In this document: one piece after another, positions 25,978 through 33,075 of the stretch
Numbering within the stretch: the stretch's first letter is position 1
How the letters are laid out: the number at the start of each line of letters is the position of its first letter
From: Anaeramoeba ignava BMAN
Lineage: Eukaryota; Protista; Anaeramoebae
NCBI GenBank assembly: GCA_028826165.1
Contig: JAPDFW010000025.1
Location: 1-64,000, forward strand
Direction of reading: 5' to 3'
Length of the DNA stretch: 64,000 nucleotides
Position numbers and translations under genes: made by a program
The notes under the pieces: model-generated
What the model saw: the letters and a program-made list of their open reading frames with translations, nothing else
What the model was told of the DNA's origin: nothing
The model's database searches: none

Positions 25978-28900
25978 TTAAAAATCTTTCATTCTTCCAG
26001 TATTTAAATTTGCCAGTTCACTTAATAACATTGCTTCAAATGTTTCATAGTCATTGAATTCAGGACAATCTACATTATTGAAACAAGTATGCGCATTGAT
26101 TTGGTCTTGAGGAGAATAAAAAATGAAAATCCTCTTCTTAAAACCGCCAATAGGAATACTTGCTAATCCAGTGACATATCTTAAGAATCGCCTCAAGTTA
26201 TTTGGATTCTTGTCGTTTTCTTTCAGAAATCTGACAAAGAAATCCTTTGTTTTGTGTTGTGGTTTCCAATCCTTGAATTCAATCTCATTCAAAACGGAAG
26301 TTGAATCAATTTGGAAATTTCCGCAAATCAAAAGGTTTAATTCTGAAGGTGTAAATGAGTCCAAATTTTGTTGGATGCATTTCAAAGTTGAGTTATCATC
26401 CGATATTTCGTTTTTTCGGATATAATTTGAGATTTCGAATCCTTCGCGAATTTTTTCAAGTGCAGATCGACAGTTGTCAATCAGTATTTTTCGACACGAA
26501 GAAACAATGAATTCGCGTCGGTTATTGTTTGTCACAAGAATATCTTCACCGTTCTCGTTCTGGAATTCAAACCCAATAACAGAGGCGTCAGGCATCAAAA
26601 GAACTGTATGATATTGGTTTGCCAGTTCACCATCAACATGTCCAAGTTCGCTTAACCAATCTTCAAGTGATCTTTCTTCGTTCTCCTTTTTGAGAAGAAA
26701 AGCAAAAAAAATTGGGGGCATAGGTAAATTGATCGGTTTTTGTAGAATCATTGATTTCAAAATGGCTTTTCCAATCACAAAATATGTTTGAGCTTTGGTT
26801 CGATCAAGTGGATCTTCAACTGGCAAATAACAATCAGATTTTTCATCATTTTTGCGGAATAGTTTCTGGTCTGGATGGAAAGCAAAGTCGAAAAACATGC
26901 TGAATAAATCCTTAGTCAAACCGCCTGCATCAATTGCGGATTCCTGATCAAAAGTGGATCTAAATGGGGAGAACAAATTTTCTTGGTCTATCCATTGATT
27001 AAAGGCTTGCACGCTTTCATAGAACATGTTATTCCGATTCAGGTACAGCTTCTGTTCGTTGCGATTGCGTGTGCTTTGGGATAGAAGGGTTTTCATGGTT
27101 GAGATTCTTTTATCACTTTCCGAAATCATTTCTTGAAGACGATTCGGTGTGATTGTGAAAAAAGAGTGCAGAAGTGTTTCTTTTGCTGAGAGTCTCTTTT
27201 TCGGATCTGTATTTAGAAGTCGATTGAGAAGATTTTCGAGAGTTGGATTTGTGAATTTATCTGGGAATTCCAGTTTTTCTTTTGGAGAAACTTGTGGTTT
27301 TTTTTGAAACAAAATATTCTTTGTTTTTTCGGTTATGAAAATTGCATCATAAATAACAACCCCAAAGGAGTACATATCAGACTCTGTGTTTGATGGGTTT
27401 CCTTGGAGAACCTCAGGAGCAATATATCGCTCGTGGATTCTCTTCTGTTGTTCCGAGAAACCTGAATTGGTTGATTTGAAGCGAATATCCTCTGCAAATC
27501 CTATTAATTTTACAATTTGTTGATTTTCGAAGTTGATCAAAATATTGAATAGATTTAAGTTTCTGTGATAGATGCCTTCAGAGTGGAGATAATTCAATCC
27601 CATGAGTATTTGTGTAAATATTGCAATTAACTGGAAACATCTACTTATATAAGTGCTTGTGGTCGGGGATTTTTTTTCAGAAAGAAGAAATTGGTATAAA
27701 TTTCCTTTGTTGCAAAAAGGTAAAACTAAATGGATATATTGATTTTCCTGAAAAAACATTTTTGCATGAATAATATTTGGGTGATCATACACAACAAGAA
27801 TTGGCACCTCGCGATGAAGATGCTCAATTTCAATTAATGGGATTGCCTTCACTATCAACCATGATCCATCTCCTTTTTTCTTTTGAGCCTTAAACACTCG
27901 AATTTTTAAACTTGAATCCCCATCCTTTTCAATATTTTCATTTTCATTTTCATTTAAATAATTTTCGTTTCCAATTTCTTCAACGTTCTCAAAGTTTTTT
28001 TCCATACTTATTCCTTTTTCTAATAAATACGTCCATAAAAACGTCTTGTGATAACCCTTTTCTGAAAGCATTTCGGGATAAAATTGGTGCTTGATTTTGT
28101 TGATTGCTTTTTCTTTCTTTTGCATTTCAAGCTTGGTATTTTTATGTTGTTTTTTCAATATTGATAACCGATTTGAATCTGATTCTTCCAAATTCTCGAA
28201 ATGCTTTTCCTTTTTGATTTTCAGATTCAATTTTTCCACTTTAATTTTTTTCTTTTCCTTTTCAAGCTGAACAATTTCCGAGTTGATTCTCTCCATTTCT
28301 ATTTTTTTCTCGGTAAATAGCCTTGCCTTTTGGCTCAGCATTTTGATCCATTTGTTTGTGTTTTGAGATTTTTTGAGGGATTTGCGGAAATCAACGATAA
28401 AATATCTTAGCATCCACATCAAATTATAAACAACTTCAAAATATATCCCAATCTGTATTTTGTTCTTGAAATTGATCATTTTCAAATAGCTTTCCTTGAG
28501 TTGTTTGTTTGTTTCTTGCCAATCATTGATATTTCCTGTTGATATTTTTTTTGCAGATTCTTCCTGCAAAGTTGAATATCCTTCCACTATTTTTTTGCAT
28601 TCAGAACCATAAATGGTGCTGAAACAACTAAACACTTCAAATGCATTGCATATTTCTCTTGTGTTTATTGGCGTTTTCTTTGATATTTCCGCCAATTTTT
28701 TGTTGATTTCCTTTTGTTTATGATCAATAGCTATTTTTGTTCTTATTGAAATTAGTCTTGTTTTTTCAAACACAATTTTCATTTCTTCCAACAAAATTTT
28801 TTCTAGCTCTTTTAATTGAGTCTTCTTTTCCATTTGCTTTGATATTAAATTCGCATTTTCTGCGACTTCTTTTTGCAAATCTATTATTAATCCATTTCTT

Positions 28901-30864
28901 TTTTGGATCAAATCAGAAAAATTTTCCTTTTTCTCTTTGATTTGCTCCAAAATTTGTTTGTTAATTTCTTCAATTTGCTTGAGTTTGTTTTTTGCTGATT
29001 TTATTTCAATTTCTTTTTGTGGAATATTCTCGATAATCCCCATTACTTTTTTGATTTGAGTTGAAAATGCTGATTCTTCATTTTGAAATGTTGCCAAATA
29101 AAGAATGTATTTATTTTCATTTTGTTCCTTTTTGGTTTGATATTTCATCATTTCTTCTTTTTTGATTAGATAATTTTTGTATTTATTTTCAAGGAAATTT
29201 AAAGGATCTTTTTTCTACATAATTTTAAACACACACTTATTTTTTTTGTATTAAATAAATCTATAAGAAATATTTTTTTTACTTCCTAAATTAAATTTTA
29301 GATTTTTATATTTAAATTTTATATTTAAATTTTATTATTTACTGCATTTTTCTTGAAATTTGCTCCATTTGCAACTAATAATTTAGCAATTTCGAAATGA
29401 TTATATTTACATGCTAGAAAAAATGGAGTTTCTTTTTTCTAATTGAAGGAAAATGATAAAAAATAAAAGAAGAACAAAATTTTTATTTTTATTTTACTTT
29501 CTAAAAAAAAAAGGATAAATTATTTTAATTGGATTGAATTGTTTTTTTTTTTACATTTCGTAAATTCACAGAAGCTCCTCTATCGATTAAATATTGAATT
29601 TCTATGTATGATTGTCTTATAACAAAATCATGTAGAGGAGTATTTCCCTTTTAAATTTAAACAAAAAGATTTTTAGAAAAATTATTCATTTGATAAAGTT
29701 TTTTAAAACTCAATTTACTTCCTAAAAAAAAGTGTTAAAAAAAAATTGAAAAAAACAATTTGGATAATTTTTGATTTACATTCTAAATTCCACAAAGAAT
29801 AAAATGAATTCAAATTAAAATTTCTTTTCATTTTATTATTTACATCCATAATATTTGGATCAACTAAATTTGAATCAAGAATATTTTTGATTTGTAAACA
29901 AGTATTTGCATAATGAAGTGAGATTTTTCCCTAAATTGATTAAGAAAATTAGCAAAAGAGAAGTATTTCAAATTTAAAAATTACCCACTTTTATTTTGTT
30001 TATGAATTATTTAAAAAAAAAATGAATAAAATTGTTTTGAAAAAATCAATAATTTACAATCTAAAAAAAATTTGGTTAAAATGAATAAAAAAAATAAACA
30101 GAATTTTTAAAATGAATTAATTATGAACATCTTTAATAGATGTATCTGCACCATTTTTGAGCAATAAAATTACAACTTCATCTGTTGATTTTTCTTTTAA
30201 AGCCATATGAAGTGGAGTCATTAACTAAATTGAATTAAAAAAGGATATATTTTGTTTGATTTTCTGAATGAGAAGAATATAATTTTTACAAACTTTTTTG
30301 GGATAAGAATAAGTAATTAGAAACATTTTGAATTTTCTATGTATATTTTTTTTTGATTTACTTTCTAAAAAAAAGTCAAATAAATAAAAGGGTTTTTTTT
30401 TCATAGAAAATTTTAAATTAACATTTTGTATATTTAAATCAGGTTTTCTAGAAATGAGAGCTTGAATAAACTGTATAGGAGCTTTTAAACTTAAAGCTGC
30501 ATGTAAAGGTGTAATTTTCTTATTAAAAGAAAAGGAAGTTATTAAATTTTTCTAATCAAAAAAAAAATTATAAGAAATTACTTTCTAAAAATTACAATTA
30601 TAAGAAACTACACTTTTTTTTTTATTATATTTTTTTTTACTGACTAAATTTTAGTGATTAATTAAATGTAAAAAAAAAAAAAACTAAAATTATTTTACAT
30701 TTTGAATATTTATATTTTGGTTATTTATTATTTTGATTGCTTCTTCAAATTGTCTATTTTTAATAAATCTGAATAAATCTTTAATCTACAAACACAAAAT
30801 TAAATAAAACACAAAATAAATAAAACACAAAATAAAACAAATTTTTTACATTTTTGTTTGACAT
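25978..30864 (-). CDS. Ankyrin repeats + coiled coil + pseudokinase + HECT E3 ligase, 18 exons, ~1278 aa
   Basis: Exons 30850-30864, 30699-30785, 30423-30518, 30129-30224, 29844-29930, 29555-29647, 29343-29438 and 25978-29214, plus ten 3-nt exons. All introns are GT-AG and phase 0, and the model joins in frame to ORF 25978-29151. HECT motifs AIDAGGLTKDLF, FLRYVTG and AHTCFN (catalytic Cys). Confidence 0.88.
29283..30643 (-). other. Array of ten single-codon micro-exons
   Basis: AG|NNN|GTAA at 30641-43 (S), 30582-84 (K), 30362-64 (K), 30290-92 (F), 30058-60 (I), 29985-87 (W), 29780-82 (N), 29719-21 (E), 29498-500 (K) and 29283-85 (E). Confidence 0.8.
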
Positions 30865-30919: not shown

Positions 30920-33075
30920 AATAATTTTTTAATTAAAATTAATAAAATGAATTTAATTAAAATTAATAAAATAAATTTAATTAAAATTAATAAAATGAAT
31001 TTAATTAAAATTAATAAAATGAATTTAATTAAAATTATTTAAATAAATTTAATTAAAATTAATTAAAAATATTTAAATAAAATTAATTAAAAATATCTAA
31101 ATAAAATCGGATAAAAATATTTAAATAAATTTAATTAAAAATATTTAAATAAATTTAATTAAAATTAATAAAATAAATTTAATTAAAAATAATTAAATAA
31201 AATTAATTAAAATTAATAAAATAAATTTAATTAAAAATATTTAAATAAAATTAATTAAAAATAATTAAATAAAATTAATTAAAAATATTTAAATAAAATC
31301 GGATAAAAATATTAAAATAAATTTAATTAAAAATATTTAAATAAAATTAATTAAAAGTATTTAAACAAAATTAATTAAAAATATTAAAATAAAATCGGAT
31401 AAAATTAATAAAAATAAATTTAATTAAAAATATTAAATAAATTTAATTAAAAATATTTAAATAAATCTAATTGAAAATATTAAAATAAAACTAATTAAAA
31501 ATATTAAAATAAAATTAATTAAAAATATTTAAATAAAATTAATTAAAAATATTAAAATAAAAATTAATTAAAATTAATAAAATAAATTTAATTAAAAATA
31601 TTTAAATAAAATTAATTAAAAATATTTAAATAAATTTAATTAAAATTATTTAAATAAAATTAATTAAAAATATTTAAATAAAATCGGATAAAAATATTTA
31701 AATAAATCTAATTAAAAATATTTAAAATAAATTAATTAAAAATATTAAAAATAAATTTAATTAAAAATATTTTAAATAAATTTAATTAAAATTAATAAAA
31801 TAAATTTAATTAAAAATATTTAAATAAATTTAATTAAAAATATTAAAATAAATTTAATTAAAAATATTTAAATAAAATCGGATAAAAATATTTAAATAAA
31901 ATTAATTAAAAATATTTAAATAAATTTAATTAAAAATAATTAAATAAAATTAATTAAATATATTAAAATAAAATTAATTAAAAATATTTAAATAAATTTA
32001 ATTAAAAATATTAAAATAAATTTAATTAAAAATATTTAAATAAAATTAATTAAAAATAATAAAATAAATTTAATTAAAAATATTTAAATAAAATTTAATT
32101 AAAAATATTTAAATAAAATTAATTAAAAATATATTAAAATAAAATTAATTAAAAATATTTAAATAAAATTAATTAAAAATAATAAAAATAAATTTAATAA
32201 AAATATTTAAATAAAATTAATTAAAAATATTTAAATAAATTTAATTAAAAATATTAAAATAAAATTAATTAAAAATATTTAAATAAAATTAATTAAATAT
32301 ATTAAAAATAAAATTAATTAAAAATATTTAAAATAAAAATTAATTAAAAATAATAAAATAAATTTAATTAAAAATAATTAAATAAAATTTAATTAAAAAT
32401 ATTTAAATAAATTTAATTAAAAATATTAAAATAAAATTAATTAAAAATATTTAAATAAATTTAATTAAAAATATTTAAATAAATCTAATTAAAAATATTT
32501 AAATAAAATTAATTAAAAATATTTAAATAAATTTAATTAAAATATTTAAATAAATTTAATTAAAAATATTTAAATAAATTTAATTAAAAATATTTAAATA
32601 AAATCGGATAAAAATATTTAAATAAATTTAATTAAAAATAATAAAATAAATTTAATTAAAAATATTTAAATAAATTTAATTAAAAATATTAAAATAAAAT
32701 CGGATAAAAATATTAAATAAAATTAAATAAAAATATTTAAATAAAATCGGAAAATATTAAAATAAATTAAATAAATTTAATTAAAAATATTTAAAATAAA
32801 TTTAATTAAAAATATTTAAATAAATTTAATTAAAAATATTTAAATAAATTTAATTAAAAATATTTAAATAAATTTAATTAAAAAATATTTAAATAAAAAT
32901 CGGATAAAAATATTAAAATAAATCTAATTAGAAATAATTAAATAAAATTAATTAAAAATATTAAAATAAAATCGGATAAAAATATTTAAATAAAATTAAT
33001 TAAATATATTTAAATAAATTTAATTAAATATATTTAAATAAAATCGGATAAAAGTATTTAAATAAATCTAATTAA
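30920..33075. repeat. AT-only minisatellite (~24-bp unit aaaaatatttaaataaatttaatt, variants with aaatcggataaaa)
   Basis: Lies between the divergently oriented HECT and kinesin genes. Confidence 0.9.

What the first reader, a model, noticed from the sequence alone, without database searches (positions are those of the whole stretch)
29215..30864. Ankyrin domain built from one-repeat exons interleaved with ten single-codon micro-exons encoding the hairpin tip residues
Seen: each ankyrin repeat is a phase-0 exon (87-96 nt). Between them lie one or two AG|NNN|GTAA units, spaced by uniform ~50-70 nt introns. Including them gives NIQN-S-K-KITPLH, NIQN-K-F-LMTPLH, SIKD-I-W-GKISLH, NIMD-N-E-GNTPLH, NLRN-K-KKETPF and KNA-E-KKDPL. 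Every junction recovers the canonical D/N-x-x-x-x-TPLH spacing, and only one micro-exon occurs exactly where the flanking exon already supplies the other residue. Established: these hairpin positions are variable target-contacting residues of ankyrin repeats (randomised in DARPins). Inference: isolating each specificity codon as its own exon could allow frame-preserving combinatorial splicing, or independent recombination of binding residues, on an E3 ligase, i.e. a receptor-diversification system. I know of no description of this, and gene predictors would miss it.
Basis: partly seen in the sequence, partly recalled or inferred. Interest (0 to 1): 0.95.

Follow-up and report, generated by a model that had tools for sequence, protein, structure and literature searches.

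The report
Single-codon exons in ankyrin hairpins
In the amoeba Anaeramoeba ignava, an ankyrin-HECT ubiquitin-ligase gene carries ten three-base exons that each seem to encode one loop residue. This layout recurs across the genome, current annotation misses it, and no RNA data could be reached to confirm it.

Summary
On the minus strand, 30864-25978, lies a gene for an ankyrin / coiled-coil / kinase-like / HECT protein of Anaeramoeba ignava. Six one-repeat ankyrin exons (87-96 nt) are separated by ten AG|NNN|GTAA units, and all 17 introns measured are 54-71 nt.

Indirect evidence says the units are real single-codon exons:
- Each exon covers Pfam Ank positions 2-32 of 33.
- With the units the hairpin has the canonical length; without them the repeat period is one never seen in intronless ankyrin arrays of the same genome.
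- No unit is a stop codon.
- Tandem units occur 502 times genome-wide for a 3-nt spacer, against 26 for 2 nt and 6 for 4 nt.
- Units in a phase-1 host gene are stop-free in phase 1.

The layout is not specific to ankyrin repeats. It also occurs in a BTB-TLDc loop and in a C-terminal tail, sometimes with near-identical introns in arrays.

Two earlier first-reader notes of this scan describe the same thing on other DNA of this genome. I found no published description.

The parts
30850..30864 (-). Exon 1: start codon plus four codons (MSNKN), followed by a GTAA donor
   Evidence: Read. It is shared with the NCBI model P0001.
30699..30785 (-). Exon 2, 87 nt, phase 0: N-terminal capping half-repeat ending NIQN
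   Evidence: It is absent from the NCBI model. It has no Pfam hit on its own.
30641..30643 (-). Single-codon exon m1, TCA (Ser)
   Evidence: A TAG acceptor lies before it and a GTAA donor after it. The flanking introns are 55 and 56 nt.
30582..30584 (-). Single-codon exon m2, AAA (Lys)
   Evidence: flanking introns 56 and 63 nt. A local 24-nt direct repeat (83% identical) flanks it (family D6).
30423..30518 (-). Exon 3, 96 nt: ankyrin repeat starting KITPLH
   Evidence: Pfam Ank: residues 3-32 match profile positions 4-32 of 33.
30362..30364 (-). Single-codon exon m3, AAA (Lys)
   Evidence: the acceptor follows a run of T; flanking introns 58 and 69 nt.
30290..30292 (-). Single-codon exon m4, TTT (Phe)
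   Evidence: AAG acceptor, GTAA donor; flanking introns 69 and 65 nt.
30129..30224 (-). Exon 4, 96 nt: ankyrin repeat starting LMTPLH, with donor GTTCAT
   Evidence: Pfam Ank E=3.9e-6: residues 2-32 match profile positions 3-32 of 33.
30058..30060 (-). Single-codon exon m5, ATT (Ile)
   Evidence: flanking introns 68 and 70 nt.
29985..29987 (-). Single-codon exon m6, TGG (Trp)
   Evidence: AAG acceptor; flanking introns 70 and 54 nt.
29844..29930 (-). Exon 5, 87 nt: degenerate ankyrin repeat starting GKISLH
   Evidence: It has no Ank hit on its own; its place in the array is by register only.
29780..29782 (-). Single-codon exon m7, AAT (Asn)
   Evidence: flanking introns 61 and 58 nt.
29719..29721 (-). 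Single-codon exon m8, GAA (Glu)
   Evidence: flanking introns 58 and 71 nt. Together with m7 it gives D-N-E-G-N-TPLH.
29555..29647 (-). Exon 6, 93 nt: ankyrin repeat starting GNTPLH
   Evidence: Pfam Ank E=3.6e-5: residues 1-31 match profile positions 2-32 of 33.
29498..29500 (-). Single-codon exon m9, AAA (Lys), the only unit at this junction
   Evidence: flanking introns 54 and 59 nt. The next exon already begins at profile position 1-2.
29343..29438 (-). Exon 7, 96 nt: ankyrin repeat starting KKETPF
   Evidence: Pfam Ank_3 E=1.5e-6: residues 2-28 match profile positions 2-28.
29283..29285 (-). Single-codon exon m10, GAA (Glu)
   Evidence: flanking introns 57 and 68 nt.
25978..29214 (-). Exon 8, 3237 nt including the stop codon: C-terminal half-repeat, coiled coil, kinase-like domain and HECT domain
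   Evidence: ORF. Pkinase E=4e-37 and HECT E=8e-35. It is 100% identical to residues 237-1293 of NCBI protein P0001.

Best explanation
The ten units are genuine, most likely constitutively spliced, single-codon exons of an Anaeramoeba ignava gene for an ankyrin / coiled-coil / pseudokinase-like / HECT ubiquitin ligase.

Each ankyrin repeat is one exon covering profile positions 2-32. The one or two residues at the tip of the beta-hairpin are each flanked by a complete short intron (54-71 nt) with its own GTAA donor, T-rich tract and AG.

Inferred mechanism: the introns are recognised one by one (intron definition) and removed in sequence, because a 3-nt exon leaves no room for two spliceosomes at once. 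After the first cut the codon is part of a normal-sized exon.

Inferred origin: extra introns were gained 3 and 6 nt upstream of an older intron that sits two codons before TPLH. That older intron position is seen in the A. flamelloides orthologue. The architecture then spread with the repeats and their paralogues. The same process acts genome-wide in loops and tails that tolerate it. In some families it continues as arrays of near-identical introns with one codon between them.

Nothing indicates a special diversifying role in this gene.
For: Shown by tool results:
- All ten units and the 54-71 nt introns are present; the published modal intron length is 76 nt (PMC11550330 supplement).
- The exons match Pfam Ank positions 2-32 of 33, so two positions are missing per junction, or one where the next exon starts at position 1.
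- In 19 locus-strands, most of them chosen by Pfam hit rather than by the unit pattern, junctions carry 1 unit (35 cases) or 2 units (34 cases), and rarely none (2 cases).
- With units the TPLH-to-TPLH period is 33 or 34 in 43 of 58 junctions, as in intronless arrays of the same genome (33: 58, 34: 29, never below 33). Without units it is 32 in 43 of 58.
- The loop from GAxxN to T is 7 residues in 69 of 71 intronless repeats. In split genes it is 7 in 17 of 19 with the units and 5-6 without them.
- There are no stop codons in 130 units, although about 10% of triplets in the same introns translate to stops.
- Genome-wide tandem units: 3-nt spacer 502 (control 134), 2-nt 26 (control 411), 4-nt 6 (control 55), 6-nt 8 (control 39). 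Of the 502 first units none is TAA, TAG or TGA.
- Units in phase-0 hosts would give 12 stops in 56 units if read in phase 1. The 94 units in the phase-1 BTB-TLDc hosts give none in phase 1.
- The A. flamelloides orthologue P0007 has full-length hairpins. One is encoded contiguously; the other has a single intron two codons before TPLE.
Against: - There is no transcript evidence.
- The annotators' model, built with RNA-seq hints, lacks the units. It is visibly faulty, however, since it retains an intron and skips an exon.
- The residue preference at the position just before G-x-T does not match the intronless arrays (log-likelihood -12.7 bits).
- About a quarter of the genome-wide tandem hits could be chance or satellite-like arrays (control 134 of 502).
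- The constitutive character of the splicing and the proposed origin are both inferences.
Confidence: 0.8

Rival explanations
1. The units are not used. Each cluster is one long intron (116-198 nt) removed in a single step, and the internal AG|NNN|GTAA sites are relics of intron duplication. The protein would then have hairpins two residues shorter.
For: The NCBI model joins four of the junctions directly. Skipping keeps the frame. In the BTB-TLDc family, skipping the whole chain gives a sensible GPSFG-S-DIEL join.
Against: A period of 32 and a 5-6 residue loop are absent from 110 and 71 intronless repeats of the same genome. Unused relics would accumulate stop triplets and lengths other than 3 nt, and neither is seen. 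The internal sites are at least as close to consensus as those of the large exons: 10 of 10 have a GTAA donor, and several acceptors follow long T runs.
Confidence: 0.08
2. One reading: the units are included in a regulated or combinatorial way, or are shuffled by recombination. This would diversify the target-contacting hairpin residues of an E3-ligase receptor.
For: To my knowledge the unit residues fall on the positions randomised in designed ankyrin repeat proteins; this was not tested here. Any combination of skips is frame-preserving. Several host families are E3-ligase related: ankyrin-HECT, ankyrin-BTB and BTB-TLDc. In BTB-TLDc paralogues the number of units differs (7, 15, 16 and 25) and the introns are similar enough to recombine.
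Against: No position has alternative cassettes, and a skip changes loop length rather than residue identity. The architecture also occurs in a C-terminal tail. In this gene the introns are diverged (median identity 0.58). One-unit versus two-unit junctions are fully explained by keeping the canonical hairpin length.
Confidence: 0.1
3. Chance pattern or assembly artefact in a very AT-rich sequence.
For: The genome is about 80% A+T, and short AT-rich motifs recur often.
Against: All nine hits of the 64-kb window lie in 1.4 kb on one strand, and none of 100 shuffles reached 9. The tighter pattern AATAG-NNN-GTAAATAAT has 591 sites genome-wide against 1 in the control. The same register is seen in about 20 independent genes.
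Confidence: 0.01

Closest known systems
Micro-exons, including isolated 3-nt exons (Drosophila homothorax, PMC7392893; human MAP4K5, PMC8632122; plant micro-exons of 1-15 nt, PMC8831610)
   Same: They are exons of a few bases flanked by canonical splice sites. They are frame-preserving, often encode surface-loop residues, and are routinely missed by annotation.
   Different: Known cases are single exons, or at most two or three, in long-intron genes, and many are alternatively spliced. Here one or two sit at every repeat junction, chains reach at least 25 consecutive units, the introns are about 60-75 nt, and the size is almost exclusively 3 nt (6 nt is rare).
Introners / introner-like elements (PMC9860276, PMC4457414)
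   Same: One intron family found here has hundreds of near-identical copies at several loci on different contigs.
   Different: The copies are mostly head-to-tail arrays with exactly 3 nt between them, not dispersed single insertions. Terminal repeats and target-site duplications were not examined. The introns of the gene in this finding are not similar to each other.
Stwintrons and other complex introns removed by consecutive splicing (PMC8469720, PMC5587772)
   Same: Closely abutting introns must be removed in successive reactions.
   Different: In a stwintron the inner intron interrupts a splice signal of the outer one, and no exon remains between them. Here each intron is complete and a whole codon is left in the mRNA.
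Intron gain by tandem genomic duplication (PMC4974935)
   Same: This is a candidate origin for the arrays with near-identical introns. It would also explain the runs of identical neighbouring codons seen in some chains.
   Different: Simple duplication adds residues, whereas the ankyrin hairpins keep the canonical length. In young arrays the codons differ far more than the introns do.
Micro-exon genes (MEGs) of Schistosoma (from my own knowledge, not checked here)
   Same: Genes are built largely from very short symmetric exons, and this has been proposed as a source of protein variation.
   Different: MEG exons are 6-36 nt and encode secreted proteins. Here the exons are 3 nt, lie in intracellular domain proteins and are interleaved with normal exons.

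Membership tests
Ankyrin repeat (Pfam PF00023) | A roughly 33-residue repeat with a TPLH-type motif that matches the profile | tested here: met
   Exons 3, 4, 6 and 7 match Ank or Ank_3 at E = 7e-3 to 1.5e-6, covering profile positions 2-32. Exons 2 and 5 do not score on their own.
Ankyrin repeat (Pfam PF00023) | Canonical hairpin length between successive repeats (7 residues from GAxxN to T) | tested here: met
   The feature is met only if the single-codon exons are counted: 5 of 6 junctions in this gene, and 17 of 19 in paralogues, against 69 of 71 in intronless arrays.
HECT ubiquitin ligase (PF00632) | HECT domain at the C-terminus with the catalytic cysteine | tested here: met
   HECT E=8.4e-35 over residues 757-1043 of exon 8. 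An HTCFN motif is present near the C-terminus (translation). No enzymatic activity was tested.
Active protein kinase (PF00069) | Catalytic HRD aspartate and DFG aspartate | tested here: not met
   The Pkinase fold matches at E=4e-37. The translation, however, reads HRN in place of HRD and GFA in place of DFG. The A. flamelloides orthologue also lacks both. The domain is probably a pseudokinase.
Micro-exon (real exon of 30 nt or less) | Canonical acceptor and donor directly flanking the segment | tested here: met
   All ten units have an AG before them and a GTAA after them.
Micro-exon (real exon of 30 nt or less) | Presence of the segment in mature mRNA | not testable with these tools
Introner-type mobile intron | Many near-identical intron copies at unrelated sites | tested here: not met
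   For this gene the median pairwise intron identity is 0.58. For the intron family of locus L001 the feature is met in part: 362 matches at four or more array loci and 591 pattern sites against 1 in the control.
Stwintron | An inner intron splits a splice signal of an outer intron | tested here: not met
   Each intron has its own complete donor and acceptor, and 3 nt of exon remain between neighbours.

The most novel reading that the evidence does not exclude
Anaeramoeba ignava may use 'codon-plus-intron' arrays as an in-frame generator of loop length and sequence. Unequal recombination between near-identical short introns, or regulated skipping, would add, remove or reshuffle single residues without any risk of frameshift. 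This would act preferentially in the substrate-binding loops of expanded E3-ligase adaptor families (ankyrin-HECT, ankyrin-BTB, BTB-TLDc). It would be a new route to receptor diversification, and it would demand a spliceosome able to process dozens of consecutive 3-nt exons.
Probability: 0.12. Interest if true: 0.95.

Novelty: new variant of a known kind. Interest (0 to 1): 0.82.

Why it matters
If transcripts confirm it, this is by far the densest use of minimal exons known. One or two single-codon exons would sit at every repeat junction of many ankyrin genes, chains would reach at least 25 consecutive 3-nt exons, and one intron family alone would contribute hundreds of sites.

- Splicing: it would show how far intron-definition splicing can go and would force sequential splicing models.
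- Intron origin: it gives a live system for studying intron gain next to existing introns and array expansion.
- Annotation: many public A. ignava protein models would be wrong, with hairpins too short, retained introns or truncated TLDc proteins. The published mean intron length of 300 nt against a mode of 76 nt may be inflated by merged clusters; this last point is my inference.

Tried and rejected
- RNA evidence. The look-up of sequencing runs (kind rna) returned a single run of unknown kind with 40 million letters, about 1x of the genome and so most likely DNA.
- Transcript-derived proteins. The collection does hold a Trinity transcriptome of A. ignava from EukProt (P0249), but that transcript comes from an intronless paralogue. 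Searches with the large exon and with P0001:1-330 found no transcript of this gene.
- Joined model. Searching or folding the joined model, with or without the units, was left out.
The very large arrays on C137, C87 and C57 and about 20 further loci were therefore not inspected, and I did not try to obtain them through another tool.
- Residue preference at the position just before G-x-T was inconclusive.
- Intron similarity within this gene gave only splice-signal-level repeats, so no duplication history could be read here.
- Literature. No paper in the library links Anaeramoeba with micro-exons. The genome paper's intron section does not mention them.

Full report
**What is there**

The window is extremely AT-rich. 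The finding lies in a minus-strand gene. Its large last exon (29214-25978) encodes a coiled-coil region, a protein-kinase fold (E=4e-37) and a HECT domain (E=8e-35). That exon is 100% identical to an NCBI protein of Anaeramoeba ignava, P0001, which is 1293 aa long. The window is contig C27 of a 42.8-Mb assembly.

Upstream of the large exon I rebuilt the model base by base:
- exon 1, 30864-30850;
- exon 2, 30785-30699;
- five further one-repeat ankyrin exons of 87-96 nt, all phase 0;
- between them, ten AG|NNN|GTAA units: TCA, AAA / AAA, TTT / ATT, TGG / AAT, GAA / AAA / GAA.

The 17 introns I measured are 54-71 nt. The genome paper gives a modal intron length of 76 nt and 8% G+C for this species (PMC11550330 supplement). 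If the units were ignored, the introns would be 116-198 nt.

**Is it more than chance?**

TAGNNNGTAA occurs 9 times in the 64-kb window against 2.6 expected, and no shuffle reached 9. All nine hits lie in 1.4 kb on the minus strand. Eight are the units and one lies inside an exon.

**Are the units coding?**

No RNA could be examined, so the case rests on six independent indirect lines.

1. Profile register. Taken exon by exon, the ankyrin exons match Pfam Ank positions 2-32, 3-32 and 4-32 of 33. Two profile positions are therefore missing at each junction.

2. Internal control.
   - Most ankyrin genes of this genome are intronless arrays. In twelve such loci the T-to-T period is 33 (58 cases), 34 (29 cases) or longer, and never shorter. 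The loop from GAxxN to T is 7 residues in 69 of 71 cases.
   - In split genes, most of them chosen by Pfam hit in a short open frame rather than by the unit pattern, junctions carry one unit (35), two units (34), none (2) or three or more (4).
   - Counting the units gives periods of 33 (20) and 34 (23) and a 7-residue loop in 17 of 19. Ignoring them gives a period of 32 in 43 of 58 and loops of 5-6.
   - The remaining short periods come from my crude exon finder cutting some exons early.

3. Stop avoidance. None of the 130 units in these genes is a stop codon, yet about 10% of the triplets inside the same introns translate to stops.

4. Exact length. The table counts two units separated by 40-70 nt, genome-wide.

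   | Spacer | Hits | Control |
   |---|---|---|
   | 3 nt | 502 | 134 |
   | 2 nt | 26 (24 from one satellite) | 411 |
   | 4 nt | 6 | 55 |
   | 6 nt, then a 3-nt unit | 8 | 39 |

   Of the 502 first units, six start with T followed by two purines, and all six are TGG.

5. Reading phase.
   - In a BTB-BACK-TLDc family (loci L002-L004), chains of 7, 15, 16 and 25 units follow an exon that ends one base after GPSFG, so the host is in phase 1.
   - Read in phase 1, the units give acidic and aromatic loops and run in frame into the conserved DIELNSN... exon.
   - The 94 units of these hosts contain no stop in phase 1.
   - The 56 units of two phase-0 hosts would contain 12 stops if read in phase 1, and contain none in phase 0.
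   - Units thus obey the frame of the gene they sit in.

6. Orthologue.
   - A. flamelloides P0007 (KAJ3432702.1) has the same ankyrin / kinase-like / HECT architecture.
   - At its locus L011, the first hairpin is encoded contiguously.
   - The second hairpin has one 142-nt intron two codons before TPLE. That is the position of the last intron of every cluster in A. ignava.
   - There are no units at L011, and both hairpins are full length.

**What the public annotation does**

P0001 joins four junctions directly, reads through one intron cluster and skips exon 2. Models of the chain-bearing TLDc paralogues stop a few residues after GPSFG. The annotation is not evidence against them.

**Scope**

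The architecture is not confined to ankyrin repeats.
- At C1:409300-413130 (L001), a coiled-coil gene ends in about 35 single-codon exons and then a last exon of two codons plus the stop. The introns there are near-identical, with a median pairwise identity of 0.89.
- That intron family gives 362 matches in arrays on C1, C137, C87 and C57, with neighbours 3 nt apart.
- The pattern AATAG-NNN-GTAAATAAT has 591 sites against 1 in the control. None of the units is TAA or TAG; five are TGG and six are TGA, and the host phase of the TGA units is unknown.
- In an ankyrin-like gene (L005), chains of 10, 10 and 4 units with dissimilar introns encode hydrophilic inter-repeat loops.
- In the gene of this finding the introns are diverged, with a median identity of 0.58. 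Only splice-signal-level repeats and one 24-nt local repeat were found. The architecture here is therefore old.

**Interpretation**

The best reading (confidence about 0.8) is that these are real single-codon exons, most likely constitutive. They would be spliced by sequential removal of self-sufficient short introns.

The origin is inferred. Introns were gained 3 and 6 nt upstream of an older intron in the hairpin without changing protein length, and the layout then spread with the repeats. Elsewhere, arrays of similar introns expand and add residues; the TLDc loops are 8-26 residues long, against 2-9 in intronless paralogues. Why the spacing is 3 nt and hardly ever 6 nt is unexplained. It points to a mechanism with a fixed offset rather than to selection for frame alone.

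- there are no alternative cassettes;
- a skip would shorten the hairpin rather than change a residue;
- the introns are too diverged to recombine;
- the same layout occurs in a tail and in a TLDc loop.

It is not excluded for the young arrays, where unit number differs among paralogues. I give that reading about 0.1.

**Limits**

- No transcript evidence. The only run found is probably DNA.
- The collection holds an A. ignava transcriptome, but not this gene.
- Searching or folding the joined model was left out.
- The residue test at one hairpin position was inconclusive.

**Novelty**

Isolated 3-nt exons are known (PMC7392893, PMC8632122), and micro-exons are known to be under-annotated (PMC8831610). 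Introners (PMC9860276), stwintrons (PMC8469720) and intron gain by tandem duplication (PMC4974935) are the nearest known processes. I found no description of systematic or tandem single-codon exons, and no paper linking Anaeramoeba with micro-exons. The genome paper's intron section does not mention them.

Two earlier first-reader notes of this scan (s1-682794, s1-682795) report the same idea on other pieces of this genome, unchecked. I class the finding as a new variant of a known kind, with high interest pending RNA confirmation.

Noticed in passing
G000:C1:409300-413130 (locus L001, minus strand): A coiled-coil gene whose C-terminal tail is written as about 35 consecutive single-codon exons, separated by near-identical introns of about 75 nt. 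A few units have a decayed donor. One intron holds an (ATT)n tract of about 1.2 kb.
   Followed up: partly
G000:C1:1057900-1073200 and C1:942300-942800 (loci L002-L004): BTB-BACK-TLDc paralogues with 7-25 single-codon exons in phase 1 in the loop after GPSFG. The family has at least 297 proteins and most members are intronless. NCBI models of the chain-bearing members are truncated right after GPSFG.
   Followed up: partly
G000:C137:610600-622500; C87:271500-277250; C57:593600-597600: Very large arrays of the same intron family with 3 nt between neighbours. The C137 array spans about 12 kb. The units listed for C57 and C87 contain no stop codon.
   Followed up: no
window 26900-27900 (kinase-like part of exon 8): The kinase fold reads HRN instead of HRD and GFA instead of DFG. 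The A. flamelloides orthologue also lacks both aspartates. The domain is probably a pseudokinase, despite the 'serine/threonine-protein kinase' name in the database.
   Followed up: partly
window 29215-30864 versus protein P0001: The NCBI gene model skips exon 2, reads through the intron cluster after exon 3, and joins the other ankyrin exons without the single codons. It gives 1293 aa, against about 1276 aa for the model derived here.
   Followed up: yes
G000:C35:359713, C112:120244, C137:749068, C137:749252, C137:805236, C147:98320: Six units of the repeated intron family read TGA. They may sit in phase-1 or phase-2 hosts, may be a stop codon carried on its own exon, or may be dead copies.
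   Followed up: no
G000:C123:146885-148081: A satellite with a 27-nt unit that contains TAG-AA-GTAA. It accounts for nearly all tandem hits with a 2-nt spacer.
   Followed up: no
window 30930-31200: Upstream of the gene lies an AT-only tandem repeat with a unit of about 24 nt. Several 2-kb stretches of the window fall to 4-9% G+C.
   Followed up: no
locus L011 (A. flamelloides JANTQA010000047.1:10669958-10680311): The orthologue has only two or three ankyrin repeats and a long Lys/Glu/Gly low-complexity linker. It has a single hairpin intron at the position shared with A. ignava.
   Followed up: partly
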